Positions 2,965 to 61,725 are shown, numbered from the stretch's first letter. The stretch is 64,000 bases of DNA from IMGVR_UViG_3300046787_000286:62001-126000, one strand, 5' to 3'. Notes: a model not told the origin generated them from the letters alone. Program-made: numbers and translations.

Positions 2965-3144
2965 TTAATTACCTTCTAACTGCTCTATTTTATCGGCAGC
3001 TTCTTCAAGTAAGTCAGCAATGCGATCGGGCTTGCCCTCTTCTACACTCTTGCGTCCTTGAATCTGTCGCCTAATCTCTGCTCGCTTACGCAAGCGAAAG
3101 ACTAGGCTTTGTTCACTAACAGGTAGATGACTTTCGTCAATCAT
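2965..3144 (-). CDS. small hypothetical protein (59 aa, below track cut-off)
   Basis: MIDESHLPVSEQSLVFRLRKRAEIRRQIQGRKSVEEGKPDRIADLLEEAADKIEQLEGN; ATGA overlap with the ligase stop. Confidence 0.7.
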   Translation of the reverse strand: MIDESHLPVSEQSLVFRLRKRAEIRRQIQGRKSVEEGKPDRIADLLEEAADKIEQLEGN

Positions 3145-4046
3145 ACTGTTTCCATATAGTTACGTACCCACTCTAAACGAGCTTGCTCGTCCATAGCAGT
3201 ATACTCAACAATGTTAGCACGGATAGCATCCACTAGTGGATAGTATTCTTCGTCTAGTTGGTGCTTGATGTCTTTGTTCAAGTCTACTAACTTGTCTGTA
3301 CGTGGATTGCGAGCAACCCACTTTGAAGTCAAGTAGTATGGTGACTTGATTTTAGCACTCACACCTTCGTTAGTGTAGAATACAAAACCTTCGTGCTTGC
3401 ATTCCTTTGCTAAGTTCTTCAATGCAGCCATTGAAGTTGTTACACTTTCTGGCTTGTGACAGTTAAACAACAATGCTAAGTCTTGCAACACACATGGATC
3501 GTGCCCCACTTTAGATCCAAACTCGTTTTCGCGATAGCCTAAAACATACATGCCTGCCTTCTCTGGAACGATATGAGGGTCACTTGGGTGAACACACTCG
3601 AACATCACAGTCATACCGTCTAGTTCATCGTCACAAAATGCTATACGCCAATCAGCTAAAGAACCATGAGTCAACATCATTTCTTTTGCCAGGTCAACGT
3701 ATGGGCTGTCAGTGCTACCTGTAGTAGAAACTAGCACGTCGCCGTTATACCAAGTTATAGCAACCATAAAGCCGTTGACCTTACGATATGCTAGCACTTC
3801 TGTATCGTCGGCCAGCACTGGTGCTTCCTTTTCGATACCGTAGTTGTAGATCTTTGTGAATGGATATGACACTAGGTTGAAATCCTTGTCCACAATAGAC
3901 CCACGACATTCAGCAATGTATTCATTCCACAGGTTATCGTAGAACACTTTCTTCTTGTACTTTAGCACGTAGATACCGTCGCCGGCTTCCTTCATGTTAA
4001 CCAAGTTAGAAGTAGCTACATACTCCTTCAACTCATCTTTAAACAT
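3141..4046 (-). CDS. T4 Rnl1-like RNA ligase
   Basis: motif I RKVNGF, FECVHP, EGFV, KIKS; CRG and FTKIYNYG N-terminal motifs; likely start MFKDELKEY. Confidence 0.85.
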   Translation of the reverse strand: MFKDELKEYVATSNLVNMKEAGDGIYVLKYKKKVFYDNLWNEYIAECRGSIVDKDFNLVSYPFTKIYNYGIEKEAPVLADDTEVLAYRKVNGFMVAITWYNGDVLVSTTGSTDSPYVDLAKEMMLTHGSLADWRIAFCDDELDGMTVMFECVHPSDPHIVPEKAGMYVLGYRENEFGSKVGHDPCVLQDLALLFNCHKPESVTTSMAALKNLAKECKHEGFVFYTNEGVSAKIKSPYYLTSKWVARNPRTDKLVDLNKDIKHQLDEEYYPLVDAIRANIVEYTAMDEQARLEWVRNYMETV

Positions 4047-4500
4047 ACCAAATTTCCTTAAAGCCTTCTTCTTCAGTTGGCATTTCAAAATTGTTAATCA
4101 TTGAACGCATAACGTTCTCCGGAATTGCCTTACCTGGTCGGCTAGCTAATCGACGTTCGTGTTCTTCCTTTTCGGGAGTACGAAACACAACAGCAATCTT
4201 TTCATAGTTAGACAAAATTGCCAACTTAGACTTGCGAGATTTTGCGCTAGTATTAGTTTGATCCCAAATACAATCTACTTGGTTCGCGTGGCAAACTCGT
4301 GCTTGATTGTCCATCAACTTCATTGCAATAGGCGCATATTCTTTGAACACTTCGTTGTAAGTTTTACCTACACGTTCTGCATGCTCGTCAATAAAACGAT
4401 CGCTAGAGATAACCGGAACACCATCAGTCCAATTTTGTGCTTTGATCCAAGTGCTCTTACCTGAACCTGGCACACCAATTAACATGTAAACTTTTGGCAT
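4039..4500 (-). CDS. polynucleotide-kinase-like P-loop protein (AAA_33)
   Basis: GVPGSGKST, SSD, WDQTN, lid RLASR. Confidence 0.85.
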   Translation of the reverse strand: MPKVYMLIGVPGSGKSTWIKAQNWTDGVPVISSDRFIDEHAERVGKTYNEVFKEYAPIAMKLMDNQARVCHANQVDCIWDQTNTSAKSRKSKLAILSNYEKIAVVFRTPEKEEHERRLASRPGKAIPENVMRSMINNFEMPTEEEGFKEIWYV

Positions 4501-4509
4501 AATTACTCC

Positions 4510-5052
4510 TTAGTGGTGAGCTCGAATCTCACCTTTTAATGCGTCTGCAATCATGTCGTCCATGTTGCTAACCACACGACCTGTTGCGTCAAAAGCTACA
4601 TCACGGGCACGATACTTTTCCATGCCAGTCTTTGCACCATGTACATGACCGTAGAAGTGAACACTACCACGATGCATTTGGTCCCACTCCCAGATAGGGT
4701 AGTGCAACATGATAACAATTTGACCTTCATGGTTGTAACGCAAGTACTGATGCACTTCCTTAAACTCTGCACGGAATGCAGGGTCATTCAACAACTTGCG
4801 GTCATGATTGCCTTCAACCAAAATCTTACTACCATTCAACCGGCGCAAGATATCCACTGCGTCTTTTGCTGGCAAGAAAGCAAAGTCACCCAAGATGAAT
4901 GTTTCATCTTCTGGCGCAACACTTGCGTTCCATTCTTTAATCATCTTTTCTCGCATGTCAGCCACATCAGTGAAGCCTGCCCGAGTTACTGGGCAAAACT
5001 TCATAATGTTTGCGTGACCAAAATGCAAGTCACTTGTAATCCATTTTGTCAT
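4510..5052 (-). CDS. calcineurin-like metallophosphoesterase
   Basis: DLHFGH, LGDF, GNHD, HYP, GHVH motifs. Confidence 0.9.
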   Translation of the reverse strand: MTKWITSDLHFGHANIMKFCPVTRAGFTDVADMREKMIKEWNASVAPEDETFILGDFAFLPAKDAVDILRRLNGSKILVEGNHDRKLLNDPAFRAEFKEVHQYLRYNHEGQIVIMLHYPIWEWDQMHRGSVHFYGHVHGAKTGMEKYRARDVAFDATGRVVSNMDDMIADALKGEIRAHH

Positions 5053-5054
5053 TA

Positions 5055-5252
5055 TTATTCTCCGATGTATTCACGAACCCAATCAAAGTGAGCTTCGTCT
5101 GCTTTAACCCACTTGAACTGTTCTCGACGACGGTTGATTTTGTCAAAGTCAAAACAGATAAAGATCCAGCCCTTGTCCTCTGAGAACATGACGGTATTTT
5201 GGACTTTGACAATCTGTACGATTTTGTCTTTCATCTTTGCTACTATCATCAT
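5055..5252 (-). CDS. hypothetical protein
   Basis: operon position behind a sigma70 promoter. Confidence 0.6.
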   Translation of the reverse strand: MMIVAKMKDKIVQIVKVQNTVMFSEDKGWIFICFDFDKINRRREQFKWVKADEAHFDWVREYIGE

Positions 5253-5281
5253 GCTAGATCCTTTTGCTTTGTTATGTGTAT

Positions 5282-5310
5282 ATTATAGCAAATCGGGCAT
5301 TTTTGGTCAA
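5282..5310 (-). promoter_or_regulatory. sigma70-type early promoter of the RNA-repair operon
   Basis: TTGACC-17-TATAAT. Confidence 0.8.
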
Positions 5311-5330
5311 CCAAAAAATGTAGTACTTAA

Positions 5331-5813
5331 TTACACATCGCCTTCGCGGGTTGGACTATCTTCTAATCCCCACTCAACGCCATTGATTGTGTGGGGCTCT
5401 GCTTCGTCATAAGTCCAACCCAGCGCCTTCATCATCTTGTGCTTGACAAGTAAGTTAGGACTACGAAATGCTTCAGTGTCATCAAAGCCTAACATTACCC
5501 CAATTTCTGCAACTGCACCCGAACGGCACACTCCTGCGTGGCAATGAACAATAACGTTCATGCGTTGACCGTATGCTTTGAGCAACAAGTCAACCAATTG
5601 CTTGGCCTGTTCATCTGTGCATTTGCATTCGTCTGGAAAGTTATCTTTGTCCTCAGCATCCAAGAATTCAAACTGATGAACTTCACGGAATTCATACTTG
5701 GGAACAGGAAACTCGTATGCTGGATCTACAATCTGAATCAGCATAGAGTTAATGCCGGGGGTAATATGAAACCCTTGACGAATGTCACTCATGCTTACAT
5801 TTTGAATCCACAT
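5331..5813 (-). CDS. protein-tyrosine/dual-specificity phosphatase-like protein
   Basis: HCHAGVCRS (CX5R) and FLD acid loop. Confidence 0.8.
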   Translation of the reverse strand: MWIQNVSMSDIRQGFHITPGINSMLIQIVDPAYEFPVPKYEFREVHQFEFLDAEDKDNFPDECKCTDEQAKQLVDLLLKAYGQRMNVIVHCHAGVCRSGAVAEIGVMLGFDDTEAFRSPNLLVKHKMMKALGWTYDEAEPHTINGVEWGLEDSPTREGDV

Positions 5814-5835
5814 AAAAAATCTCCTTTAATGCGTT

Positions 5836-5864
5836 ATTATAACACTAAAGGAGATTTTGGTCAA
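5836..5864 (-). promoter_or_regulatory. sigma70-type early promoter
   Basis: TTGACC-17-TATAAT. Confidence 0.8.
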
Positions 5865-5889
5865 GTACTACCTTAGTACTACTTTTGTT

Positions 5890-5964
5890 TGGTACCTGGT
5901 GACGGTTTCGAACCGCCGACCCGCTGCGTGTAAAGCAGCCGCTCTCCCCCTGAGCTAACCAGGC
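5890..5964 (-). tRNA. trnV: tRNA-Val(TAC)
   Basis: loop TTTACAC, CCA. Confidence 0.95.
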
Positions 5965-5972
5965 AAATTGTT

Positions 5973-6046
5973 TGGAGCGGGGTGCGGGAATCGAACCCGC
6001 AACTTCAACTTGGAAGGATGGTGTTTTACCACTAAACTAACCCCGC
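5973..6046 (-). tRNA. trnG: tRNA-Gly(TCC)
   Basis: loop CTTCCAA, U73, CCA. Confidence 0.95.
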
Positions 6047-6054
6047 ATTAAATC

Positions 6055-6130
6055 TGGCTCCCCAGCGTGGGATCGAACCACGGACACCTTGATTAACAGT
6101 CAAGTGCAACTACCGCTGTGCTACTGGGGA
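6055..6130 (-). tRNA. trnN: tRNA-Asn(GTT)
   Basis: loop CTGTTAA, CCA. Confidence 0.95.
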
Positions 6131-6139
6131 ATATTTTTT

Positions 6140-6229
6140 TGGCGGTGCGAAAGAGACTCGAACTCTTAAAGCGGCTTTCACCACTCGACGGATTAGCAAT
6201 CCGCTCCAATACCATTATGGGACCGCACC
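6140..6229 (-). tRNA. trnS: tRNA-Ser(GCT)
   Basis: loop TTGCTAA, long variable arm, G73, CCA. Confidence 0.95.
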
Positions 6230-6233
6230 AAAC

Positions 6234-6608
6234 TTAACAAGGTATCGAACTTAGTTCATCTACCTGCTGCCTAGTAATATAATGAACTTTTTTACCGTCC
6301 ATAATACTTATAGGCATATAAACTACTCTATCTATGTCTGACAGATAAACTGCCCAACAGTCGATTAAATCTCTATTAATAGCAACACCCTTCCCGTTTA
6401 CCATAGAAGATGCTGCTATTTCATATCTATCACCTCTTCCCGGTGATCTATATTTTATTTGCAATCTAAACAATCTACCCTCTGAATCAACTGCTATACA
6501 GTCAACTGGATTATAGTCATCAAACGGTGTAAACGCGGTAAATCCTTTGGTGTATAAGTCTCCTATAACTTTAATAAGTCCTAGGTTGCCTTTTTCATTA
6601 ACATTCAT
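6234..6608 (-). CDS. free-standing PD-(D/E)XK homing endonuclease (I-Ssp6803I-like)
   Basis: GNLG...PFDD...VDCIA...LQIKY motif order; inserted between tRNA genes. Confidence 0.75.
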   Translation of the reverse strand: MNVNEKGNLGLIKVIGDLYTKGFTAFTPFDDYNPVDCIAVDSEGRLFRLQIKYRSPGRGDRYEIAASSMVNGKGVAINRDLIDCWAVYLSDIDRVVYMPISIMDGKKVHYITRQQVDELSSIPC

Positions 6609-6685
6609 GTGTATCTCCTGCTATGTTTATTTAGCAGATGATGCATCTGTTTGAATTACCGTCCTGCCCGTCTTCCAATTATTCT

Positions 6686-6714
6686 ATTATATATCCAACT
6701 GCATGTGCAGTCAA
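6686..6714 (-). promoter_or_regulatory. sigma70-type promoter inside the tRNA array
   Basis: TTGACT-17-TATAAT. Confidence 0.8.
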
Positions 6715-6720
6715 CTATTT

Positions 6721-6803
6721 TGGTACCCCTGGTCAGATTCGAACTGACATATTATACTCCTCTGTTTGAGAGAGGCGACTTTACCAAGTTTGTCCACAGG
6801 GGC
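6721..6803 (-). tRNA. trnL: tRNA-Leu(CAA)
   Basis: loop CTCAAAC, variable arm, CCA. Confidence 0.95.
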
Positions 6804-6808
6804 ATTTA

Positions 6809-6883
6809 TGGTGGATGTAGCTAGATTCGAACTAGCGGTAGGCACCGTATGAAGATGCTGCATTACCACTTTGCTATACATCC
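6809..6883 (-). tRNA. trnM: tRNA-Met(CAT), non-initiator type
   Basis: loop TTCATAC, no GGG/CCC anticodon stem, CCA. Confidence 0.85.
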
Positions 6884-7000
6884 ATATAGAAGCACTCTCA
6901 AATGCAGGCCTAGGAGGAGTCAAGCTCTGAAACCTTTGCGTATGCATCCACTAGGGTCTCTTCTCCCGCTTTGACTTATGCTAAGAATACTTCTATATGG
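6882..7000 (-). ncRNA. stem-clamped spacer RNA A (between His CCA and Met 5' end)
   Basis: about 17-bp terminal stem CCATATAGAAGTATTCT/AGAGTGCTTCTATATGG with G-U pairs on the minus strand. Confidence 0.65.
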
Positions 7001-7073
7001 GGTGTTAGATGGGGAACGATCCCATACTATCGCTTTCACAGAGCAATGTGCAGACCACTACACTACTAACACC
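6998..7073 (-). tRNA. trnH: tRNA-His(GTG)
   Basis: loop CTGTGAA, G-1/C73, CCA. Confidence 0.9.
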
Positions 7074-7085
7074 ATAAATATTTTT

Positions 7086-7250
7086 GTGAAAACTTACTAC
7101 AGTCAAACACCAGCCGGATTAGACTTTCAATTGAGTCTAAGTGATGATGGCGTGTGTTGCATTATAGTTTACGACACTTACGATTGTGAACTTGTCATGC
7201 GCTATTTCACTAACGTCAATCGAGCTCTACGCTTTATCAACAATCTCTAA
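7086..7250 (+). CDS. small antisense-orientation hypothetical protein (54 aa)
   Basis: GTG start 5 nt after the late-promoter motif ATAAATA (7074-7080); the rest of track ORF 6978-7250 overlaps tRNA-His. Confidence 0.5.
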   Translation: MKTYYSQTPAGLDFQLSLSDDGVCCIIVYDTYDCELVMRYFTNVNRALRFINNL

Positions 7251-7252
7251 TA

Positions 7253-7381
7253 CCATATAGAAACACATTCTTGACGTAAAGGGTCTTTTCATCGCGCTGG
7301 TTAGGCTGCTTCATAGTGAGACTCAACTATTAACCAAGTTGCTCGAAGTCTACTATCAATGATGAATGCATTTCTATATGG
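7253..7381 (-). ncRNA. stem-clamped spacer RNA B
   Basis: CCATATAGAAATGCATTC/GAATGTGTTTCTATATGG terminal stem. Confidence 0.65.
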
Positions 7382-7566
7382 CATTTGTAAAGCCGGCTCA
7401 CTTTGAGCACCCTCGTCCTCCACGGACGGAGTTCTATTGTCATCATCAGTAGCATCCAACAACGCAGGGCCCATTGTTATCTTACTCTACCAACTTATCG
7501 CGTCCCTTGCTCATACCCGTCGGTAATCACTCAGGCTTTCATTTAAACTACAGCTTAACAAATACC
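7379..7566 (-). ncRNA. 188-nt structured RNA closed by a GGTATTTGTTAAGC/GCTTTACAAATGCC stem
   Basis: 14-bp terminal stem ending in ...GCCA; internal hairpins; no plausible ORF. Confidence 0.5.
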
Positions 7567-7692
7567 ATATGAAAACATTCTGTTGTGCTTGAAACAGTGA
7601 CAACCCATCTTCCTGGCAACTTTTACCTGTATAGTCGACTTCAGGGTTACTCGATGAACTCCAGTGTAGTTGTTCAGAATGTTTACATATAG
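7565..7692 (-). ncRNA. stem-clamped spacer RNA C
   Basis: CTATATGTAAACATTCTG/CAGAATGTTTTCATATGG terminal stem. Confidence 0.65.
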
Positions 7693-7792
7693 CAAGCTCA
7701 TTGTAGGCAGGGCTCGAACCTGCACACAGTCCTTACGGATAATGTCGCCCCTATAACGGGGCAATGTCTACCAATTCCATCACTACGAGCTC
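7690..7792 (-). pseudogene. Leu-type class II tRNA-like RNA with non-canonical anticodon loop and a CTA end
   Basis: D-arm GTGATGGAATTGGTAGACA, T-arm GCAGG-TTCGAGC-CCTGC, GCCCC-GTTATA-GGGGC hairpin, bulged acceptor stem. Confidence 0.6.
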
Positions 7793-7840
7793 CTGGAGTT
7801 AATTACTCTCCAGCATGGGTGTTACCTGCAGATAACACTT

Positions 7841-7949
7841 ACCATATGTAAACACACTAACGAACCTGGCTGTGGGCCGCGAACCCACTGTTTTCGCGTG
7901 GCACCAGCAAGTATTGCCACAATTACTGGTTAATGTGTTTGCATATGGT
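7841..7949 (-). ncRNA. stem-clamped spacer RNA D (after Lys CCA)
   Basis: ACCATATGCAAACACATTA/TAGTGTGTTTACATATGGT terminal stem. Confidence 0.7.
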
Positions 7950-8019
7950 AGGGCTGCGGGGTAATGATCCCCGTTCTACTGGTTAAAAGCCAGTTGCTTC
8001 ACCTTAAAGCTTCAACCCC
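7946..8019 (-). tRNA. trnK: tRNA-Lys(TTT)
   Basis: loop CTTTTAA, CCA. Confidence 0.95.
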
Positions 8020-8022
8020 ATA

Positions 8023-8098
8023 TGGTCCCTCTGGTGGGAGTCGAACCCACACGTCACGGATTAAGAGTCCGGCATGCTGCCTTAACATCTCAAAGGGA
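8023..8098 (-). tRNA. trnK: tRNA-Lys(CTT)
   Basis: loop CTCTTAA, CCA. Confidence 0.95.
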
Positions 8099-8207
8099 TG
8101 GATTGTAAAAATTGTCTTTTACGTGCCATCCCGGACCATACAGGGTACAGGGATGACACTAACGTTTACCTGAACGTTTCATATCAAAGTTTCCTTATAA
8201 AAAATTT

Positions 8208-8283
8208 TGGTGCCGAAGAATGGATTTGAACCAGTGACACACGGATTTTCAATCCGCTGCTCTACCAACTGAGCTACATCGGC
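8208..8283 (-). tRNA. trnF: tRNA-Phe(GAA)
   Basis: loop TTGAAAA, CCA. Confidence 0.95.
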
Positions 8284-8290
8284 AATTGTT

Positions 8291-8364
8291 TGGTGCTCTC
8301 ACCAGGTATCGATCCTGGGTTTCTACATTACCAATGTAGTGTAATGCCTTTATACTATGAGAGC
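8291..8364 (-). tRNA. trnT: tRNA-Thr(GGT)
   Basis: loop TTGGTAA, CCA. Confidence 0.95.
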
Positions 8365-8619
8365 TTATTCTTCGTCGACTTCTTCTGAGTCGATTACTAC
8401 AATATCTTCTGCATCGATGTCTTCTTCATCGATTTCGTCGAGTACAACTTCTGCTTCTTCAACTACAGGTGCAGCCACAGGTTTCTTAGGTCTACCCCAT
8501 GCCGAGTAACTTGCACCTTCTACTCTACCGCTTACATTCGGTTCAATTTTTTGAATAGTGCCTCCACGAGCTAAGAACTCCTGGATAGCAAGGTCGGTTG
8601 AATTGTCTCTGTTACTCAT
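8365..8619 (-). CDS. hypothetical protein with acidic C-terminal tail
   Basis: AAGGA RBS, start MSNRDNST; IQEFLARGG motif; D/E-rich tail. Confidence 0.7.
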   Translation of the reverse strand: MSNRDNSTDLAIQEFLARGGTIQKIEPNVSGRVEGASYSAWGRPKKPVAAPVVEEAEVVLDEIDEEDIDAEDIVVIDSEEVDEE

Positions 8620-8637
8620 ATGTTCCTTTAAGTTAAT

Positions 8638-8713
8638 TGGTCCGGCGTGCAGGAATCGAACCCACATTCATGAGGTAGAAGCTCATTGTACTATCCATTG
8701 TACTAACGCCAGA
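8638..8713 (-). tRNA. trnR: tRNA-Arg(TCT)
   Basis: loop CTTCTAC, CCA. Confidence 0.95.
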
Positions 8714-8715
8714 TA

Positions 8716-8816
8716 TGGTAGGAGCGGTGGGAATTGAACCCACGTTAACTGCCTTATCTAGACAGTGCTTACGGCTGTATAAGGGCCGCCCTTAGGCCAA
8801 CATTAGCAACACTCCC
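8716..8816 (-). tRNA. atypical 101-nt class II tRNA with TAT anticodon
   Basis: 7-bp acceptor stem, T-arm GTGGG-TTCAATT-CCCAC, loop CTTATAC, about 28-nt variable arm, A73, CCA. Confidence 0.7.
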
Positions 8817-8907
8817 ATTGAAAAACACACTTAGACGTAGTAGTTCTTTAGTCCACTAAGATACACGACTACCACTCGTGTCATTAGTTAAATGTGTTTA
8901 TCAATGG
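8815..8907 (-). ncRNA. stem-clamped spacer RNA E (between Glu CCA and the TAT tRNA)
   Basis: CCATTGATAAACACATTT/AAGTGTGTTTTTCAATGG terminal stem. Confidence 0.65.
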
Positions 8908-8979
8908 AGTCGCATACGGGTTACGATCCCGTCTGGTCACCTTGAAAGGGTGATGACCTCACCAGAAGTCTAATGCGAC
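8905..8979 (-). tRNA. trnE: tRNA-Glu(TTC)
   Basis: loop CTTTCAA, CCA. Confidence 0.9.
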
Positions 8980-8988
8980 ATTGTTGAA

Positions 8989-9206
8989 TTTGTAAGTAGT
9001 TGAGCCACTTTTATCTCAACTTTTTTCCTGATTATACAAGTCCGGACAGGGGGCGGCATGACACTTGGGATACTAAGTCCAGCGTGGCAACCATACTGCA
9101 CCGATCCTTTCGGATCAGCCGGGAGTCGAACCCGCTTGCCTTTTACTACACAACACCTTCGAAGAATATTGAATAGCGTGACATTCTCTTGCTGACACTT
9201 ACAAAA
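8989..9206 (-). ncRNA. about 215-nt structured RNA with an internal T-arm
   Basis: terminal TTTGTAAGT/ACTTACAAA stem; GGG-TTCGACT-CCC at 9121-9133; GATCC-GAAA-GGATC hairpin. Confidence 0.55.
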
Positions 9207-9207
9207 T

Positions 9208-9281
9208 TGGTGGAGGATAACAGAATCGAACTGTTGCGAAAACCTTGCAAAGGTCCCAGGCTACCACTACATCAATCCCCC
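9208..9281 (-). tRNA. trnA: tRNA-Ala(TGC)
   Basis: loop TTTGCAA, GGG start, CCA. Confidence 0.95.
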
Positions 9282-9292
9282 GAATTTTTTAC

Positions 9293-9367
9293 TGGAGCCT
9301 TTGTAAAGAATCGAACTTCAGTTCCCGGCTTCGTAGACCAGTGTATTATCCATTATACGACAAAGGC
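9293..9367 (-). tRNA. trnR: tRNA-Arg(ACG)
   Basis: loop CTACGAA, CCA. Confidence 0.95.
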
Positions 9368-9374
9368 AAATTGT

Positions 9375-9447
9375 TAGGCCCCGGAGGGAGGAATCGAACC
9401 TCCATTGGTTGTATACGGACCGTGTTACCATTACACTACAACCGGGA
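9375..9447 (-). pseudogene. degenerate tRNA-like element
   Basis: intact D-arm GTGTAATGGTAACAC and T-arm GGAGG-TTCGATT-CCTCC; weak anticodon arm; ends in CCTA. Confidence 0.6.
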
Positions 9448-9453
9448 TATAGG

Positions 9454-9604
9454 TTTTTGAGAGTTCCAACTATCTTTCTCAAGGACTCGCCGGGCTTGTC
9501 TCGTATGAGGGAGTTTAAACTACCTTGTGTTGCTACTGGTGTGTCAGTCTCAAGAATAGGGACCTAGCGCACAAGGGACTCAACCTCTACGTCTATCTCA
9601 AAAA
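9454..9604 (-). ncRNA. about 150-nt spacer RNA closed by TTTTTGAGA/TCTCAAAAA
   Basis: 9-bp terminal inverted repeat directly after the tRNA-Thr CCA. Confidence 0.45.
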
Positions 9605-9605
9605 T

Positions 9606-9679
9606 TGGTGCCCCATAACAGAATCGAACTGCTATCCCCGGATTACAAAACCGGTGTTCTACCATTTAACTAATGGGGC
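9606..9679 (-). tRNA. trnT: tRNA-Thr(TGT)
   Basis: loop TTTGTAA, CCA. Confidence 0.95.
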
Positions 9680-9686
9680 AAATTGT

Positions 9687-9765
9687 TGGCTCCGTGTGTG
9701 AGATTCGAACTCACCTAGTCACTGATTAACAGTCAGGTCCTTGCACCTAGCTTGGATTTCACGGA
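9687..9765 (-). tRNA. trnN: tRNA-Asn(GTT), second copy
   Basis: loop CTGTTAA, CCA. Confidence 0.9.
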
Positions 9766-9772
9766 ATAAAAT

Positions 9773-9978
9773 TGGCGTTCCTTGTAGATTTTCACTACTG
9801 CTACACTAACGAGAGCGTTACAAGTCTTCCTTATCGTGCAGCTGGTTAGGCCTATTGTCAGGAGTTACGAAGCGTTTAGTATTCAGATCTGACCTGCGAC
9901 CAAGCAGCGATGCCTGTCAACTACTACTTCACCTTGCAGAGCACTGAGAGCTCGCTGTGTCATCCTTTACGGAGGAAC
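9773..9978 (-). ncRNA. 206-nt CCA-tailed RNA with acceptor/T-arm mimic
   Basis: GTTCCT/AGGAAC stem + G + CCA; GTAG-TGAAAAT-CTAC arm immediately 5' of the acceptor strand. Confidence 0.6.
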
Positions 9979-9985
9979 ATAAAAT

Positions 9986-10060
9986 TGGCGGTCCCAGGGG
10001 GTAACGATCCCCCTCCTCAGCAGTGACAGTGCTGTGTGCGTCCATGAACACCTTGAGACC
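9986..10060 (-). tRNA. trnD: tRNA-Asp(GTC)
   Basis: loop CTGTCAC, G73, CCA. Confidence 0.95.
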
Positions 10061-10065
10061 TAAAT

Positions 10066-10138
10066 TAAGAAAAACACATTGTAAGGGGTTCTCTGGTCAC
10101 CTCTACACGCTTTTGTATACGCAATGTGTCTTATATGG
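10066..10138 (-). ncRNA. stem-clamped spacer RNA F (after Tyr CCA)
   Basis: AAGACACATTG/CAATGTGTTTT stem. Confidence 0.5.
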
Positions 10139-10220
10139 TGGAGGTGGCTGGACTTGAACCAACAATGCACAAGGGCGGCGGATTTACAGTCCACTGGGGA
10201 TACCATTTTCCTACACCTCC
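10136..10220 (-). tRNA. trnY: tRNA-Tyr(GTA)
   Basis: loop CTGTAAA, variable arm, CCA. Confidence 0.95.
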
Positions 10221-10324
10221 ATAATTCTTCTGCCGACCGGACCTGCCCCGATAATATACTAGATACGTTAAATCTAGCCTTTCTAATGATACGTGCTTTC
10301 TTCACACGAATGACGACAAATTCT

Positions 10325-10408
10325 TGGTAGGACCGACCGGAATCGAACCGGTACGCATTACGCGGCAGATTTTAAGTCTGCTGTGGCTACCTATTACACC
10401 ACGGTCCC
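10325..10408 (-). tRNA. trnL: tRNA-Leu(TAA)
   Basis: loop CTTAAAA, variable arm, CCA. Confidence 0.95.
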
Positions 10409-10501
10409 ATAAATTGTTCTGGCGGTGCGAAACCATCTGCACACTTACGCCTCTTAGCTTCTCACACCCGGGTGTTTACGCTTGGGTCATCGCCTGAAAC
10501 T

Positions 10502-10592
10502 TGGTGGACAACAATGGGAATCTAACCCACTTCTCCCTCCTATGCTATTAGGAAGTTTCAGCACAGCATCAGTGCATCACGACAGTAAGTCC
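10502..10592 (-). ncRNA. CCA-tailed tRNA-like RNA with altered T-loop
   Basis: GGAC/GTCC + A + CCA; GTGGG-TTAGATT-CCCAT arm; no recognisable anticodon arm. Confidence 0.5.
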
Positions 10593-10599
10593 ATAAACT

Positions 10600-10630
10600 T
10601 GGAAGAGCGTAGGGGAGTCGAACCCCTCTA
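10600..10630 (-). pseudogene. orphan tRNA 3' fragment (T-arm, acceptor strand, U73, CCA), Cys-like
   Basis: AGGGG-TTCGACT-CCCCT-ACGCTCT-T-CCA fused to the HNH stop codon; no matching 5' half seen nearby. Confidence 0.6.
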
Positions 10631-11065
10631 CAAGTCTTCTAAATCTTTTATACTCAAACTGGCTCGGTTAGTTTTTCCACTGCCCCAGCCAGTTTGCAAT
10701 CCTTTTAGCATATTTGCTTTTGCCTCTGGGCTAGCGTTTCTGCTACCCCATGTGTCTGTTTGTGTATGACAGTTAGGACAAAGCCAAGTCACATTGTCAA
10801 TGGTATTGTTTTTTGGATCGCCGTCGATATGTTCTAACTGGAGAACTAATTTCTTGCCATTCCAATCACTAATACCACAACAACTGCACTTATACTCTGA
10901 AAATCTCTTTAGATAAGTTTTAGCATTGCCTTTATTGGCTTTGCCACTTTCCATTATAGTTTTTATCCTATAATCTTGAGTGCATTCTCTACTACAAAAA
11001 TGCCCTGATTGTTGCGAATCAAAATACTTGTATTCTGTGTTGCAACTTTTACACAATCCAATCAT
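10628..11065 (-). CDS. HNH homing endonuclease with Zn-ribbon N-terminus
   Basis: CxxC motifs; LQLEHIDGDPKNN...LCPNCH. Confidence 0.9.
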   Translation of the reverse strand: MIGLCKSCNTEYKYFDSQQSGHFCSRECTQDYRIKTIMESGKANKGNAKTYLKRFSEYKCSCCGISDWNGKKLVLQLEHIDGDPKNNTIDNVTWLCPNCHTQTDTWGSRNASPEAKANMLKGLQTGWGSGKTNRASLSIKDLEDL

Positions 11066-11107
11066 TGGTTAGTTCTCCTTGCATTTATTTAGCAAACTAA
11101 CCAATAA

Positions 11108-11182
11108 TGGTACTCCGAAGGAGAATCGAACTCCTCTTTCCGCCTTGAAAGGGCAGCGTCCTAACCGATAGACGACCGGAGC
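11108..11182 (-). tRNA. trnE: tRNA-Glu(TTC), second copy
   Basis: loop CTTTCAA, CCA. Confidence 0.95.
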
Positions 11183-11190
11183 ATAATAAA

Positions 11191-11425
11191 CACTATACAT
11201 AAACACATTGGGATGATTGACAACAACCTATCTAGGCTAACCACGCTATCGTCTAGCGACTGGCTGTCAAACACATTACAATCCTACCTGGTCCAGCGTG
11301 ACTACTGATCAAAGCCTAAGCCGATTTCCATCTTTCATGTAACATAGCACGGCTGACACGGCTGTCAACATCGCGATGCTATTGTTACCTACTGGGGCGG
11401 TAACCCAATGCGTTTGTGTATAGTG
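11191..11425 (-). ncRNA. stem-clamped RNA G (235 nt)
   Basis: CACTATACACAAACGCATTGGG/CCCAATGTGTTTATGTATAGTG, about 22-bp terminal stem. Confidence 0.65.
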
Positions 11426-11501
11426 TCCGGAACTGAATCCGGATTCACTATACAAAAATAAATTTTTAATGAACATTAGCTAGTTGCCTAACTAAGTGTC
11501 T

Positions 11502-11670
11502 AGTATAACATGATTGCCGATACTAGTCAATTTATTTGTTGCAAGTCCTTACACTTTGTAGGGTTACTTGGTATTCAGTTAGTTGCCTAACTTCCTAACT
11601 AGCCTCTAGTATAACACTCTTTTGATAAGTGGTCTACCACAAAATATTAACCCTACGCAATGTAGGGTTA
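11502..11670 (-). promoter_or_regulatory. tandem sigma70 promoters, each preceded by a palindromic box
   Basis: TTGACT-17-TATACT (11502-11530) and TAGACC-17-TATACT (11608-11636); TAACCCTAC-N5-GTAGGGTTA at 11648-11670 and a variant at about 11544-11566. Confidence 0.7.
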
Positions 11671-11691
11671 TGTAATACTTTTGTTTGTAGA

Positions 11692-11767
11692 TGGTCTCCA
11701 TAGAAGGATTTGAACCTTCACCACATGCTCCCAAAGCATGGACGCTACCAGGTTACGCCATACGGAG
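11692..11767 (-). tRNA. trnP: tRNA-Pro(TGG)
   Basis: loop TTTGGGA, CCA. Confidence 0.95.
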
Positions 11768-11772
11768 ATAAA

Positions 11773-11994
11773 TTATTTTACTTTTGGTTCTTTTGATTTG
11801 TCAAGCTCATGTGGCTCAGCAAATCTTGTAGGTGGATGGTCAAATGTTAGCCCCATCGACTTAAACCAACCTAATGGTTTCCAGTACTTGTGTATAATGT
11901 TGTTGACTATAACTAACCCAACAATGATTACAACAAAACCCATCATTGTCAATACTGACCCGGCTAAAAATACCGCTGCTTGATCCATGTCCAT
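11773..11994 (-). CDS. small single-pass membrane protein
   Basis: hydrophobic AAVFLAGSVLTMMGFVVIIVGLVIV stretch; AAGGA RBS. Confidence 0.65.
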   Translation of the reverse strand: MDMDQAAVFLAGSVLTMMGFVVIIVGLVIVNNIIHKYWKPLGWFKSMGLTFDHPPTRFAEPHELDKSKEPKVK

Positions 11995-12009
11995 AATTTT
12001 TAAAGTCCT

Positions 12010-12086
12010 TTGGAGCGGGCAAAGAGACTCGAACTCTCGACATCTTCCTTGGCAAGGAAGTGCTCTACCAACTGAGCTATACCCGC
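12010..12086 (-). tRNA. trnG: tRNA-Gly(GCC)
   Basis: loop TTGCCAA, U73, CCA. Confidence 0.95.
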
Positions 12087-12136
12087 ATTATATTTTACTT
12101 ATTATACAACACTCTTGCTGTGTTGTAAAGACATTT

Positions 12137-12213
12137 TGGTGCCGCCACGTGAACTCGAATCACGGACCTTCCGCTTATCAAGCGGATGCTCTAACCAACT
12201 GAGCTATGGAGGC
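12137..12213 (-). tRNA. trnI: tRNA-Ile(GAT), second copy
   Basis: loop TTGATAA, CCA. Confidence 0.95.
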
Positions 12214-12218
12214 ATATT

Positions 12219-12307
12219 TGGAGGAAGGATGGTAGAATCGAACTCCAACCGCTTTCGCAGTCCATCTGTTTTCAAGACAGTGCAGGGCCCAGCCCTGATA
12301 ACCTTCC
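12219..12307 (-). tRNA. trnS: tRNA-Ser(TGA)
   Basis: loop CTTGAAA, variable arm, CCA. Confidence 0.9.
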
Positions 12308-12313
12308 ATGTTG

Positions 12314-12387
12314 TGGTCTGGGTAGGAAGAATCGAACTTCCGCATCAAGTATCCAAGACTCGGAGACTACCACTATCTTATACCCAG
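12314..12387 (-). tRNA. trnP: tRNA-Pro(TGG), second copy
   Basis: loop CTTGGAT, CCA. Confidence 0.9.
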
Positions 12388-12394
12388 ATTGTTT

Positions 12395-12469
12395 TGGTGG
12401 ACCGTAGGAGAATCGAACTCCTGCTAAAGCGTTGCAAACGCCCTGTGCTACCATTATCACTAACAGCCC
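12395..12469 (-). tRNA. trnA: tRNA-Ala(TGC), second copy
   Basis: loop TTTGCAA, G3-U70, CCA. Confidence 0.95.
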
Positions 12470-12478
12470 ATAAATTGT

Positions 12479-12552
12479 TGGCACGGGAACTAGGGATCGA
12501 ACCTAGGACGACAGAGTCAAAGTCTGTTGTGTTACCTCTACACCATTCCCGA
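12479..12552 (-). tRNA. trnQ: tRNA-Gln(TTG)
   Basis: loop CTTTGAC, CCA. Confidence 0.95.
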
Positions 12553-12908
12553 ACAAATTTTTAACGCACTGTTGCCAATGCGTGTATTAAAAAGCACAGA
12601 TGTCTATGCTCTTTAATACGCTGGGTTTTTTCACACACCACAAAAGGTGCTTCTCATCCCCCAGGCCGCCCTCATTCTAGATTTTTATAGTGACTCTACG
12701 GCTCGCGTTGCCTAACCACTGTTGCTTAACCCAAGACCGGAGTCTTGCGTCTAGCCTTAAACTGTGCTGTTGCACGTTCTAGCTTCTGAGTAATGAGCGT
12801 TTGTCTTTGCTCAGAAGTTAAAGTATGCGTCCTCAACCAATCCTTCTTATCGTTGGGTATGGATTTTACTATGTCTGTCATTAATTGTCAATTCCTACTT
12901 TAGTTTTA

Positions 12909-12947
12909 CAAAACAAAAAACCCTAGGAGTTTTAGTCCTAGGGTCCT
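12909..12947 (-). terminator. intrinsic terminator (candidate attenuator)
   Basis: ACCCTAGGA-CTAAAAC-TCCTAGGGT followed by TTTTTGTTTT. Confidence 0.75.
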
Positions 12948-12969
12948 TTAGTTTGTAAGTTACTTGCTG

Positions 12970-13119
12970 TTAAGCGTAACCTGCTCCCTCGGACCCTAAG
13001 ATAATCTCTGGTGTGCGATCATTACTATTCATTCCTGATGCAAACCATACGGCGGGGCATGTGCCCAAGCCTTTAGCCTGTGTCTGGAGTGATAACGAAT
13101 AATAATGTATGTTGTTCAT
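12970..13119 (-). CDS. 49-aa leaderless leader-peptide candidate
   Basis: MNNIHYYSLSLQTQAKGLGTCPAVWFASGMNSNDRTPEIILGSEGAGYA; ATG is 6 nt after a TATAAT box. Confidence 0.55.
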   Translation of the reverse strand: MNNIHYYSLSLQTQAKGLGTCPAVWFASGMNSNDRTPEIILGSEGAGYA

Positions 13120-13125
13120 GTTAGT

Positions 13126-13154
13126 ATTATATGTGTTTATTTATACCTTGTCAA
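13126..13154 (-). promoter_or_regulatory. overlapping sigma70 and late promoter
   Basis: TTGACA-17-TATAAT with TATAAATA inside the spacer. Confidence 0.8.
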
Positions 13155-13204
13155 CCTAGTGTTGAGCTTTTATTTAGCCTTTTGGCAAAATTAGTTTGAT
13201 TATG

Positions 13205-13387
13205 TTATGATTTTCGTCTAGAACAGTTGGGATCATTGCAAACACTAATTCTCTTGCGATCACAGTGTGGACAATCTTTTGCGATCATCCATGTTTTTAA
13301 AAACATGGGTTTTTCATTCTTACCCGGTTTATCATTGCCTGAACATTGCGTGTAAATCATAATAGCCTCCTTGGCTACTATATACAA
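13205..13387 (-). CDS. small Cys-rich (Zn-finger-like) protein
   Basis: CPHC...CNDPNC. Confidence 0.45.
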   Translation of the reverse strand: MYIVAKEAIMIYTQCSGNDKPGKNEKPMFLKTWMIAKDCPHCDRKRISVCNDPNCSRRKS

Positions 13388-13421
13388 CGCCTTGCAAGTT
13401 ACTTACGTTGACACAAAAGGT

Positions 13422-13449
13422 AAAAAAGAATGCCCGCCGAAACGGGCAT
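13422..13449 (-). terminator. intrinsic terminator after the tmRNA coding piece
   Basis: ATGCCCG-TTTCGG-CGGGCAT-TCTTTTTT. Confidence 0.85.
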
Positions 13450-13835: not shown

Positions 13836-13872
13836 ACAACAATTATATATGACTTCTTTTAAAAAGTCAATA

Positions 13873-13895
13873 GAAAAGCCCACCGAAGTGGGCTT
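13873..13895 (-). terminator. intrinsic terminator
   Basis: AAGCCCAC-TTCG-GTGGGCTT-TTC. Confidence 0.8.
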
Positions 13896-13915
13896 AATAG
13901 TTAATCTAGTTTAGA

Positions 13916-61674: not shown

Positions 61675-61725
61675 TGTTTCCTCTTAAGTATTAAGTGAAA
61701 TATTTAAGAGGAATTTACTAGTGGC

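What the first reader, a model, noticed from the sequence alone, without database searches (positions are those of the whole stretch)
6606..11105. Both homing endonucleases in the array are gated by an RBS-sequestering hairpin with a late promoter at its loop
Seen: upstream of the PD-(D/E)XK gene, CTGCTA-AATAAACA-TAGCAG-GAG (6610-6646); upstream of the HNH gene, TTGGTTAGTT-TGC-TAAATAAAT-GCA-AGGAG-AACTAACCAA-TG (11065-11104). Each contains TAAATA. Established: T4-like phage homing endonucleases such as I-TevI use this to block translation from early read-through transcripts. Inference: two unrelated nucleases converged on the same silencing so they can sit inside a highly transcribed tRNA operon.
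Basis: partly seen in the sequence, partly recalled or inferred. Interest (0 to 1): 0.6.

Follow-up and report, generated by a model that had tools for sequence, protein, structure and literature searches.

The report
Late-promoter hairpins gating two homing endonucleases
Two selfish nuclease genes inside a giant phage's tRNA gene cluster each carry an RNA hairpin that hides their ribosome-binding site and holds a likely late promoter, the same trick phage T4 uses, so this is a well-supported but ordinary new example of a known mechanism.

Summary
On the minus strand, the PD-(D/E)XK gene (6234-6608) and the HNH gene (10628-11065) are each preceded by a stable hairpin (z -3.2 to -4.0). It pairs the Shine-Dalgarno or start region with upstream sequence and encloses CTAAATA.

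TAAATA is the most enriched hexamer upstream of ORFs in this 214-kb freshwater jumbo-phage contig (11-fold). It has a fixed geometry that places the predicted start inside the 3' arm. The phage's endolysin and one further gene use the same arrangement, as T4 gene e does.

Homologues of both nucleases in 8 and 7 distinct uncultured-phage loci, and in two cultured cyanophages, keep TAAATA inside an RBS-occluding hairpin although the stems differ. Nucleotide homology with relatives begins at the hairpin's first bases, so the module belongs to the mobile cassette.

This matches the published regulation of T4 I-TevI, I-TevII, I-TevIII and segB (itself in a tRNA cluster) and of Aeh1 mobE. It is a new member of a known kind.

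Not shown: transcription start sites, timing, or a gp55-type sigma factor. The contig is 62% complete.

The parts
6234..6608 (-). Free-standing I-Ssp6803I-like PD-(D/E)XK homing endonuclease gene (124 aa). Its stop codon lies 5 nt before tRNA-Ser(GCT).
   Evidence: PF11645 at E 9e-12. The AlphaFold model (pLDDT 88.7) best matches 2OST I-Ssp6803I, TM 0.77. Depth is zero in four lake runs although the flanks are covered.
6606..6649 (-). RBS-sequestering hairpin 1. The core pairs 6642-6632 with 6623-6613. SD GGAG is at 6618-6615 and the ATG at 6608-6606.
   Evidence: RNA folds: -13 kcal/mol, with 13 of the 17 RBS/start nucleotides paired to upstream partners, versus 0.0 kcal/mol for the predicted late RNA.
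6628..6634 (-). CTAAATA, the putative late promoter core. It straddles the 5' arm and the loop. The predicted +1 is about 6622.
   Evidence: Motif enrichment and spacing statistics.
6635..6649 (-). Conserved 6-3-6 palindrome (CAGATG cat CATCTG). It is an alternative, weaker hairpin (-5.5 kcal/mol) that competes for the 5' arm.
   Evidence: RNAalifold finds 6 pairs, 2 of them with compensatory changes, across relatives.
6686..6714 (-). Sigma-70-like promoter (TTGACT-17-TATAAT) just upstream of cassette 1. Its transcripts would contain the whole hairpin.
   Evidence: Consensus scan, 11 of 12 matches. It lies outside the block homologous to relatives, which starts at 6651.
6140..6229 (-). tRNA-Ser(GCT), the invariant downstream partner of this nuclease family.
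   Evidence: ARAGORN. The homology block with L003, L006 and L008 runs 6651->6139.
10628..11065 (-). Free-standing HNH homing endonuclease gene (145 aa).
   Evidence: phrog_10822 at E 8e-27 plus eight other HNH PHROGs. The HIDGD...N...CPNCH motif is visible. Depth is near zero in the lake runs.
11061..11108 (-). RBS/AUG-sequestering hairpin 2, with a 15-bp outer stem. SD AGGAG is at 11079-11075 and the AUG at 11065-11063 lies inside the 3' arm.
   Evidence: -17 to -21.6 kcal/mol for the full context versus -0.4 to -1.8 for the predicted late RNA, with 15 of 17 RBS/start nucleotides paired.
11086..11092 (-). CTAAATA, the putative late promoter core, in the interior loop. The predicted +1 is about 11080, the A before AGGAG.
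   Evidence: The 11-nt string TGCTAAATAAA is shared with site 1.
11108..11182 (-). tRNA-Glu(TTC). Its CCA end abuts the 5' arm of hairpin 2.
   Evidence: ARAGORN and Rfam.
10600..10627 (-). Orphan tRNA 3' fragment (T arm, acceptor strand and CCA) that begins right at the HNH stop codon.
   Evidence: Read from the sequence. Neither ARAGORN nor Rfam calls it.
8365..8619 (-). Internal contrast: the third protein gene in the tRNA array (acidic, SutA RNAP-binding-domain-like) has an open SD, no hairpin and no TAAATA.
   Evidence: PF20661 at E 2.5e-8. The fold z-score is +0.5.
61678..61713 (-). Same device at a non-nuclease gene (309 aa, 60745-61674, phrog_1574): a 10-bp stem, TAAATA at 61706-61701 and the SD in the 3' arm.
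   Evidence: -18.6 to -19.4 kcal/mol versus -0.8 for the late RNA.
5816..5858 (-). Sigma-70 version of the device at gene 5331-5813 (phosphatase-like). A 17-bp hairpin has TGTTATAAT in its loop and AAGGAG in its 3' arm.
   Evidence: -20.7 kcal/mol; 16 of 17 occluded.
13126..13154 (-). Perfect-consensus sigma-70 promoter upstream in the array, on the same strand. Another lies at 15203-15231, and 11/12 or 10/12 matches lie at 12891, 12129, 11804, 11530, 11368 and 7190.
   Evidence: No terminator-like site lies on the minus strand between 11648 and 6234.

Best explanation
Each nuclease gene is a mobile cassette whose 5' end is a self-contained 'late-only translation' module.

The proposed mechanism has two states:
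- Read-through state. Host sigma-70 RNA polymerase transcribes the tRNA array from the many consensus-like promoters upstream. That RNA runs through the cassettes and folds the hairpin. The hairpin buries the Shine-Dalgarno sequence (PD-(D/E)XK) or the Shine-Dalgarno sequence plus the AUG (HNH), so ribosomes cannot load.
- Late state. A T4-type late promoter whose core here is TAAATA sits in the 5' arm or loop. Its transcripts start about 6 nt downstream, inside or just before the 3' arm. They lack the 5' arm, are unstructured, and carry a free SD 6-9 nt from the AUG. The nuclease is therefore made only late.

The phage applies the same device to its endolysin.

Shown here: the hairpins, their statistics, the motif's genome-wide behaviour, the conservation in relatives, and membership of the module in the cassette.

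Inferred: that TAAATA is a late promoter, where transcription starts, that the array is transcribed early, and the biological purpose. The purpose could be limiting nuclease toxicity. It could also be keeping ribosomes off tRNA precursors, since the ORFs end 5 nt before a tRNA or directly at a tRNA T arm.
For: 1. The hairpins are real and unusually stable.

2. TAAATA behaves as a promoter-like signal.
- It is the top hexamer within 60 nt upstream of ORFs: 38 of 93 genomic copies, 11-fold enrichment, above the SD.
- Its distance to the start is bimodal. One class lies 4-7 nt before an ATG with no SD: 19 ORFs against about 4.4 for permuted hexamers, with all 9 N5 cases opening an ORF. The other lies 17-31 nt before a start with an SD.
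- This is what a -10-type element placing +1 about 6 nt downstream would give.

3. Four genes have TAAATA inside an RBS-occluding hairpin: the two nucleases, a 309-aa gene, and the endolysin (phrog_181 at E 5e-75). The endolysin case copies the classic T4 gene e arrangement. Fisher's test for TAAATA at -45..-20 against a strong occluding hairpin gives p = 0.026.

4. Relatives keep the architecture.
- All 8 distinct PD-(D/E)XK homologue loci (42-93% amino-acid identity) and 7 of 8 HNH homologue loci have TAAATA 15-27 nt before the start, inside an SD-occluding hairpin.
- Stem sequences differ between relatives, and the predicted late RNAs fold at only 0 to -2.6 kcal/mol.

5. Cultured T4-like cyanophages DSL-LC03 (HNH) and Sf-FR1 (PD(D/E)XK, lying between two tRNAs) show the same hairpin with a perfect TATAAATA in the loop.

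6. Nucleotide homology with relatives starts at 6651 and at 11104, the first bases of the hairpin modules.

7. In the closest cultured relative, Sinorhizobium phage Phosso, TAAATA lies 19-33 nt upstream of the portal, scaffold, small terminase, tail-fibre and minor-tail genes. ATAAATA was reported before structural genes of the related phages CBB and GAP32 (PMC5259590).

8. Sigma-70-like promoters lie upstream on the same strand, with no terminator-like site before either gene.

9. The only other protein gene in the array has an open SD and no hairpin.

10. The mechanism is published for I-TevI, I-TevII, I-TevIII, segB and mobE.
Against: - No transcription start, timing or translation data exist. 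The RNA runs found are assembled contigs with no depth over either nuclease gene.
- No homologue of T4 gp55 was found on the contig with the T4 protein, phrog_234 or phrog_12791. No capsid, sheath or portal gene was found either, so the 'late' label could not be tied to structural genes in this genome itself. The contig is only 62% complete.
- The full T4 consensus TATAAATA is nearly absent: 4 copies against roughly 20 that I estimate from base composition.
- In site 1 a conserved alternative hairpin competes for the 5' arm.
- In two relatives (L008, L018) the SD is only partly occluded or lies outside the hairpin.
- A third HNH gene on the contig has neither hairpin nor TAAATA.
Confidence: 0.7

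Rival explanations
1. Constitutive attenuation. The hairpins keep nuclease translation permanently low on all transcripts, and TAAATA in the loop is not a working promoter at these two sites. This is what Brok-Volchanskaya et al. proposed for T4 segB, where no nearby promoter had been mapped.
For: - The segB precedent (PMC2330249).
- No TSS data and no gp55 on the contig.
- Nuclease toxicity would favour very low expression.
Against: - An exact TAAATA is kept at 15-27 nt from the start in 15 of 16 distinct relative loci while the stems change.
- Two cyanophages have a perfect TATAAATA there.
- The same geometry occurs at the endolysin, which must be expressed.
Confidence: 0.12
2. The inverted repeats act at the DNA level or in RNA processing: as an operator for autorepression by the dimeric nuclease (as I-TevI binds an operator over its late promoter), as a homing or insertion scar, or as an RNase III or tRNA-maturation signal. 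On this reading RBS occlusion is incidental.
For: - The conserved palindrome 6649-6635 lies directly upstream of TAAATA.
- I-TevI autorepression overlaps its late promoter (PMC2988022).
- Hairpin 2 starts at the tRNA-Glu CCA end.
Against: - A protein operator would be conserved in sequence. Instead the stems covary or are replaced while pairing with the SD or AUG is kept.
- The 3' arm always contains the SD or start region.
- None of these sites is followed by a U-run.
- This rival can coexist with the main model.
Confidence: 0.08
3. TAAATA is not a promoter but an RNA-level signal, for example an A/U-rich translation enhancer or a nuclease cleavage site. The hairpins would then regulate access to it.
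For: The motif lies very close to start codons, with a mode of 5 nt, and those cases have no SD. That could also suit an SD-independent initiation signal.
Against: - The second class lies 17-31 nt upstream with a normal SD in between.
- The motif resembles the T4 late -10 element and the motifs before structural genes in Phosso, CBB and GAP32.
- In cyanophage homologues the same position holds a full TATAAATA.
Confidence: 0.08

Closest known systems
T4 segB (GIY-YIG homing endonuclease inside the T4 tRNA gene cluster)
   Same: - It is a free-standing nuclease gene embedded in a phage tRNA cluster and co-transcribed with tRNA precursors.
- A stable hairpin (reported as 20.2 kcal) holds both the SD and the initiation codon in its stem (PMC2330249).
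[quoted passage not shown]
   Different: - The nuclease families differ: GIY-YIG there, HNH and PD-(D/E)XK here.
- T4 is a Straboviridae phage of about 169 kb. This is a jumbo phage nearest to Phosso and Atu_ph07, with DNA polymerase identities of 52% and 46%.
- Here the candidate promoter core sits visibly inside the hairpin.
[quoted passage not shown]
   Same: An RBS-sequestering hairpin forms only on transcripts from upstream early or middle promoters. A late or middle promoter placed so that its transcripts lack the 5' arm frees the RBS (PMC2988022).
   Different: - Those nucleases are intron-encoded (the I-Tev enzymes) or sit in nrd genes (mobE). These two are free-standing and lie between tRNA genes.
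- Those cases have experimental start sites; these have none.
- The motif here is TAAATA, not TATAAATA.
T4 late genes e (lysozyme), soc, 49 and others, regulated by the same hairpin-plus-late-promoter logic
   Same: The endolysin of this phage (contig 139588-140202) has TAAATA inside an SD/AUG-occluding hairpin. This parallels T4 gene e, which is listed with soc and others in PMC2988022.
   Different: The lysin is a GH19-type enzyme, not a T4 lysozyme homologue. The phage also has a sigma-70 -10 version of the device (5816-5858), which the T4 papers I read do not describe.
I-Ssp6803I (PD-(D/E)XK homing endonuclease of the Synechocystis tRNA-fMet intron, PDB 2OST)
   Same: It is the best structural match to the 124-aa protein (TM 0.77, E 3e-8), belongs to the same Pfam family PF11645, and is likewise associated with a tRNA gene.
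   Different: - Sequence identity is only 14-16%.
- The protein here is free-standing rather than intron-encoded; no group I intron is found in 1-16000.
- It is tied to tRNA-Ser(GCT) rather than tRNA-fMet.

Membership tests
T4-type hairpin/late-promoter translational gating (I-TevI, segB, mobE, gene e) | The SD and/or AUG are base-paired in a stable local hairpin on read-through RNA. | tested here: met
   13 of 17 and 15 of 17 RBS/start nucleotides are paired with upstream partners, with z-scores of -3.2 to -4.0.
T4-type hairpin/late-promoter translational gating (I-TevI, segB, mobE, gene e) | A promoter lies within or overlaps the hairpin, so that its transcripts lack the 5' arm. | tested here: inconclusive
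   The motif position and geometry fit. TAAATA lies 19-20 nt before the ATG, and the predicted late RNAs fold at only 0 to -1.8 kcal/mol. No start site has been mapped.
T4-type hairpin/late-promoter translational gating (I-TevI, segB, mobE, gene e) | The gene lies inside an earlier transcription unit, so read-through RNA exists. | tested here: inconclusive
   Sigma-70-like promoters lie upstream on the same strand, with no terminator-like site between them and either gene. This rests on sequence consensus only.
T4-type hairpin/late-promoter translational gating (I-TevI, segB, mobE, gene e) | Translation is delayed to late infection. | not testable with these tools
   The virus is uncultured. 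The RNA runs found are contigs with no depth over the nuclease genes.
T4-type late promoter (gp55-dependent TATAAATA) | The 8-bp TATAAATA box. | tested here: not met
   Both sites read CTAAATA. TATAAATA occurs only 4 times on the contig. The 6-bp core TAAATA is the enriched unit, as with ATAAATA in CBB and GAP32.
T4-type late promoter (gp55-dependent TATAAATA) | The phage encodes a gp55-like late sigma factor. | tested here: inconclusive
   T4 gp55, phrog_234 and phrog_12791 found nothing, but the contig is 62% complete. A related jumbo phage, CBB, has a gp55-like gene.
T4-type late promoter (gp55-dependent TATAAATA) | The motif precedes late or structural genes. | tested here: met
   It precedes the endolysin here. 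In Phosso it precedes the portal, scaffold, small terminase and tail genes. No structural genes are recognisable on this contig itself.
I-Ssp6803I-like PD-(D/E)XK homing endonucleases (PF11645) | Family profile match and PD-(D/E)XK fold. | tested here: met
   PF11645 scores 45.7 bits against a cut-off of 26.1. 2OST is the top fold hit, TM 0.77.
I-Ssp6803I-like PD-(D/E)XK homing endonucleases (PF11645) | Mobility: presence/absence polymorphism at a fixed target. | tested here: met
   The gene always lies directly 5' of tRNA-Ser(GCT) while its other neighbours vary. The homology block is 6651->6139. Depth over the ORF is zero, and a joint 6225->6673 appears in two lake metagenomes (one contig each, 40-nt sides, so modest evidence).
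I-Ssp6803I-like PD-(D/E)XK homing endonucleases (PF11645) | Site-specific DNA cleavage. | not testable with these tools
   Needs an enzyme assay.
HNH homing endonucleases | HNH catalytic motif and family profile match. | tested here: met
   phrog_10822 at E 8e-27 and eight further HNH PHROGs. HIDGD...N...CPNCH and the cysteine pairs are visible. Pfam PF01844 scores only 18.7 bits against a cut-off of 21.4.

The most novel reading that the evidence does not exclude
The hairpin-plus-late-promoter unit is not a local adaptation. It is a portable 5' module that travels with the nuclease cassettes of at least two unrelated families, and it occurs across phage groups as distant as T4-like cyanophages and alphaproteobacterial-type jumbo phages.

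In this jumbo phage it is one face of a wider rule: a gene is translated only from its own promoter. The rule is implemented with late (TAAATA) and with sigma-70 promoters. It sits alongside a large set of leaderless late mRNAs that start at the A of the AUG.
Probability: 0.4. Interest if true: 0.55.

Novelty: new member of a known kind. Interest (0 to 1): 0.38.

Why it matters
It extends a regulatory device known from T4 and Aeh1 in two directions. The first is to a very distant, uncultured freshwater jumbo phage. The second is to a nuclease family (I-Ssp6803I-like PD-(D/E)XK) for which I found no earlier report of this regulation in the few papers I searched.

It also gives comparative evidence, from 15 distinct environmental loci and two cultured cyanophages, that the regulatory hairpin is part of the mobile cassette itself.

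In practice the results give:
- a calibrated late-promoter model for this phage clade (TAAATA, with +1 about 6 nt downstream);
- two cultured cyanophages (DSL-LC03 and Sf-FR1) in which the mechanism can be tested.

The mechanism itself is not new.

Tried and rejected
- Near-identical DNA in cultured phages: none beyond a tRNA fragment.
- gp55 searches with the T4 protein and two PHROG profiles: nothing.
- gp23, tail sheath and T4 portal Pfam searches on the contig: nothing. The structural module is probably on the missing 38%.
- GIY-YIG search on the contig: nothing.
- PDB searches with the PD-(D/E)XK sequence and with its profile: only spurious weak hits to hnRNP A1/A2B1 RNA-binding proteins and tyrosyl-tRNA synthetase. 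The fold search was needed.
- Sequencing runs: the RNA runs are assembled contigs with small shares and no depth over the nuclease genes, so they say nothing about start sites or timing.
- The joints 10629->11157/8 have 18-22-nt sides and an anticodon arm between them. I read them as other tRNA-Glu genes, not as an HNH-less allele.
- An exact-pattern scan of viral contigs for the backbone flank 6676-6698, looking for a nuclease-less allele: no hit.
- The HNH homologues of S-CRM01 and Atu_ph07 have longer, different N-termini and could not be compared.
- RNAalifold on the PD-(D/E)XK leaders returned the upstream palindrome rather than the RBS hairpin, because the RBS stems are in different registers in different relatives. 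I therefore scored each sequence on its own.
- A literature search for leaderless late mRNAs with T4-type promoters found no directly relevant paper.

Full report
**Context**

The window is bases 62001-126000 of a 214-kb IMG/VR virus contig that CheckV rates 62% complete. Its family-B DNA polymerase is closest to Sinorhizobium phage Phosso (52%) and Agrobacterium phage Atu_ph07 (46%), and then to the RaK2/GAP32/121Q jumbo phages (about 43%). Near-identical DNA occurs in freshwater and lake metagenomes.

Almost all genes, and the 33 tRNA/tmRNA genes ARAGORN calls in the window, lie on the minus strand. The finding therefore has to be read on that strand.

**Observation**

Both quoted strings are present at the stated coordinates.

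Site 1, upstream of the PD-(D/E)XK gene (6234-6608):
- A 7-bp stem pairs 6638-6632 with 6623-6617, and a 3-bp extension pairs 6642-6640 with 6615-6613.
- The stem encloses an 8-nt loop. TAAATA lies at 6633-6628.
- The GGAG Shine-Dalgarno (6618-6615) has three of its four bases paired. The ATG is at 6608.

Site 2, upstream of the HNH gene (10628-11065):
- It covers the end of AGGAG, the spacer and the AUG itself. TAAATA lies at 11091-11086.

The folds are far better than shuffles: z -3.2 and -4.0, with 0 of 200 shuffles as good. Across 277 ORF starts on the contig, only 19 reach a looser threshold for occlusion of the RBS by upstream sequence, and some of those are artefacts such as the antisense of site 1.

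**The genes**

- The 124-aa protein hits PF11645 (E 9e-12). A confident AlphaFold model (pLDDT 88.7) best matches I-Ssp6803I, the tRNA-intron homing endonuclease (2OST, TM 0.77).
- The 145-aa protein hits nine HNH PHROGs, the best at E 8e-27, and shows the HNH motif.
- Both ORFs have zero or near-zero depth in four lake runs whose contigs cover the flanking array. A joint 6225->6673 in two runs is consistent with a nuclease-less allele. That evidence is modest: one contig per run, with 40-nt sides.

**Is TAAATA a promoter here?**

- The T4 consensus TATAAATA is almost absent, with 4 copies.
- TAAATA is nonetheless the single most enriched hexamer within 60 nt upstream of ORF starts: 38 of 93 copies, 11-fold, ahead of the Shine-Dalgarno words. 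GCTAAATA is the top octamer.
- A separate, very regular sigma-70 class (TTGACC-17-TGCTATAAT) marks the presumptive early promoters.
- The distance from TAAATA to the start codon is bimodal.
  - In 19 ORFs of at least 50 aa it is 4-7 nt (mode 5) with no SD. Permuted hexamers give about 4.4, and there are no such cases at 0-3 or 8-15 nt.
  - In about 14 others it is 17-31 nt with a normal SD.
- This is what a -10-type element that sets +1 about 6 nt downstream would produce. The first class would be leaderless mRNAs.
- Applied to the two nuclease sites, the rule puts +1 at about 6622 and about 11080. Both positions lie at or just before the 3' arm. The resulting RNAs fold at 0 to -1.8 kcal/mol, against -13 to -21.6 for read-through RNA.

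**The link to 'late'**

- On this contig the endolysin (contig 139588-140202; phrog_181 at E 5e-75) has TAAATA inside an SD/AUG-occluding hairpin. This is the arrangement classically described for T4 gene e.
- A 309-aa gene (60745-61674) has the same arrangement.
- No capsid, sheath or portal gene and no gp55 homologue was found on the contig. The missing 38% may explain this.
- In Phosso, the closest cultured relative, TAAATA lies 19-33 nt upstream of the portal, scaffold, small terminase, tail-fibre and minor-tail genes. The count is 14 copies on the structural-gene strand against 2 on the other.
- Buttimer et al. reported ATAAATA before structural genes of CBB and GAP32, together with a gp55-like gene (PMC5259590).

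**Comparative test**

- Homologues of the PD-(D/E)XK protein were found in 10 viral contigs, 8 of them distinct (42-93% identity). Homologues of the HNH protein were found in 15.
- Every PD-(D/E)XK homologue lies directly 5' of tRNA-Ser(GCT), while its other neighbours differ. The HNH homologues lie between various tRNA genes.
- In all 8 distinct PD-(D/E)XK loci and in 7 of the 8 HNH loci that have an identifiable start, TAAATA lies 15-27 nt before the start codon.
- There it sits inside a hairpin that pairs the SD or start region with sequence upstream of the motif, and the predicted late RNAs are unstructured.
- The stems are not conserved in sequence. Examples from the HNH family are GGTTAGT/ACTAACC, GTTAGATCG/CGGTCTAAC and GGTAGA/TCTACC. 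RNAalifold finds compensatory pairs in that family.
- Two cultured T4-like cyanophages carry the same construction with a perfect TATAAATA in the loop: DSL-LC03 (HNH) and Sf-FR1 (a PD(D/E)XK gene between tRNA-Arg and tRNA-Val).
- Nucleotide homology between the window and its relatives begins at 6651 and runs to the end of tRNA-Ser. For L013 it covers exactly 11104-11063.
- So the hairpin module is the 5' end of each cassette, not part of the host backbone.

**Context of transcription**

- The array carries many consensus-like sigma-70 promoters on the same strand. Perfect ones lie at 13154-13126 and 15231-15203, and 11/12 or 10/12 matches lie at 12891, 12129, 11804, 11530, 11368, 7190 and 6714.
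- No terminator-like site lies on the minus strand between 11648 and 6234. Read-through RNA over both cassettes is therefore expected, but this is an inference.
- The only other protein gene in the array, a SutA-RBD-like acidic ORF (8365-8619), has an exposed SD, no hairpin (z +0.5) and no TAAATA. Gating is thus selective within the array.
- A third HNH gene elsewhere on the contig has neither feature.

**Comparison with what is known**

[quoted passage not shown] They also describe it for non-nuclease late genes such as e and soc (PMC2988022).
- SegB is itself embedded in the T4 tRNA cluster. It has a hairpin holding the SD and the AUG (PMC2330249).
- The present case is therefore a new member of a known kind.
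- It differs in four ways: the phage lineage, the 6-bp promoter core, the PD-(D/E)XK nuclease family, and the evidence that the module moves with the cassette.

**Qualifications**

- At site 1 a conserved 6-3-6 palindrome (6649-6635) can form a weaker alternative hairpin (-5.5 kcal/mol) that competes for the 5' arm. It covaries in relatives. Its role is open: a kinetic switch, or an operator for autorepression as in I-TevI.
- The device is not nuclease-specific. A sigma-70 version exists at gene 5331-5813.
- 'Convergence' should therefore be read as two cassettes each using a general phage solution.
- The purpose may be as much to keep ribosomes off tRNA precursors as to limit nuclease toxicity. 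The PD-(D/E)XK stop codon is 5 nt from tRNA-Ser, and the HNH stop abuts a tRNA T arm. This is an inference, by analogy with the I-TevI/intron-splicing result cited.

**Verdict**

Confidence in the gating model is about 0.7. The novelty is low to moderate.

Noticed in passing
whole contig; in the window e.g. 63741->ATG 63729, 53569->53558, 21469, 21501 (+), 15890->15879: 19 ORFs of at least 50 aa have TAAATA 4-7 nt (mode 5) before the ATG and no Shine-Dalgarno, against about 4.4 for permuted hexamers. These are probably leaderless late mRNAs that start at the A of the AUG. I found no report of this for T4-type late promoters.
   Followed up: partly
window 5816-5864 (-), gene 5331-5813: A sigma-70 promoter (TTGACC-17-TATAAT with an upstream TG) is embedded in a 17-bp hairpin whose 3' arm holds AAGGAG. 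This is the same 'translated only from its own promoter' logic, built with an early-type promoter. The gene lies just downstream of the tRNA array.
   Followed up: partly
window 6139-6651 (-); L003-L012: The I-Ssp6803I-like nuclease gene lies directly 5' of tRNA-Ser(GCT) in all nine loci checked for tRNAs (the window plus eight of its ten homologue contigs), while the other neighbours vary. In L008 the ORF overlaps the tRNA. The nuclease and the tRNA form one homology block.
   Followed up: partly
window 6635-6649 (-): A conserved palindrome (CAGATG cat CATCTG) lies immediately upstream of the late motif. It is mutually exclusive with the RBS hairpin and shows compensatory changes in relatives. 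It may be a switch or an operator.
   Followed up: partly
window 10600-10627 (-): An orphan tRNA 3' part (T arm, acceptor strand and CCA) starts right at the HNH stop codon. No 5' half was found, and neither ARAGORN nor Rfam calls it. It may be a remnant of the insertion target.
   Followed up: partly
window 8365-8619 (-): A small acidic protein with a SutA RNA-polymerase-binding domain (PF20661, E 2.5e-8) is encoded inside the tRNA array. It starts 18 nt after tRNA-Arg and has an open SD.
   Followed up: partly
window 8987-9142 and other long spacers (7080-7700, 7790-7945, 9450-9600, 9690-9985, 10410-10600, 11190-11690): The array has long spacers that hold no called tRNA, some with T-arm-like motifs and recurring AAACACA-type flanks. 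A contig from metatranscriptome run X15 covers 8987-9142 at high depth, as does a DNA contig. These may be unannotated structured RNAs.
   Followed up: no
window 13405-13856 (-): The phage encodes a permuted (two-piece type) tmRNA (RF04321, 91 bits) next to the tRNA array.
   Followed up: no
window 13119-13176 (-): A perfect sigma-70 promoter (TTGACA-17-TATAAT) has a full TATAAATA inside its spacer, a GCTAAATAAA just upstream, and an ATG 6 nt after the -10 element (49-aa ORF 12970-13119). Early and late signals are stacked on one start.
   Followed up: no
contig 174692-175108 (-), outside the window (L034:14692-15108): A third HNH gene (138 aa) abuts the end of the preceding gene and has no TAAATA and no RBS hairpin. 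It is a promoter-less cassette of the kind also known in T4.
   Followed up: yes
L048 (Phosso 225001-270000), locus position about 40090-40146: In Phosso, the minor tail gene has TAAATA in the loop of a 14-bp hairpin whose 3' arm ends just before the SD. Another gene (locus 7168-8004, minus strand) has TAAATA-N5-ATG. Both motif classes therefore exist in the cultured relative.
   Followed up: no
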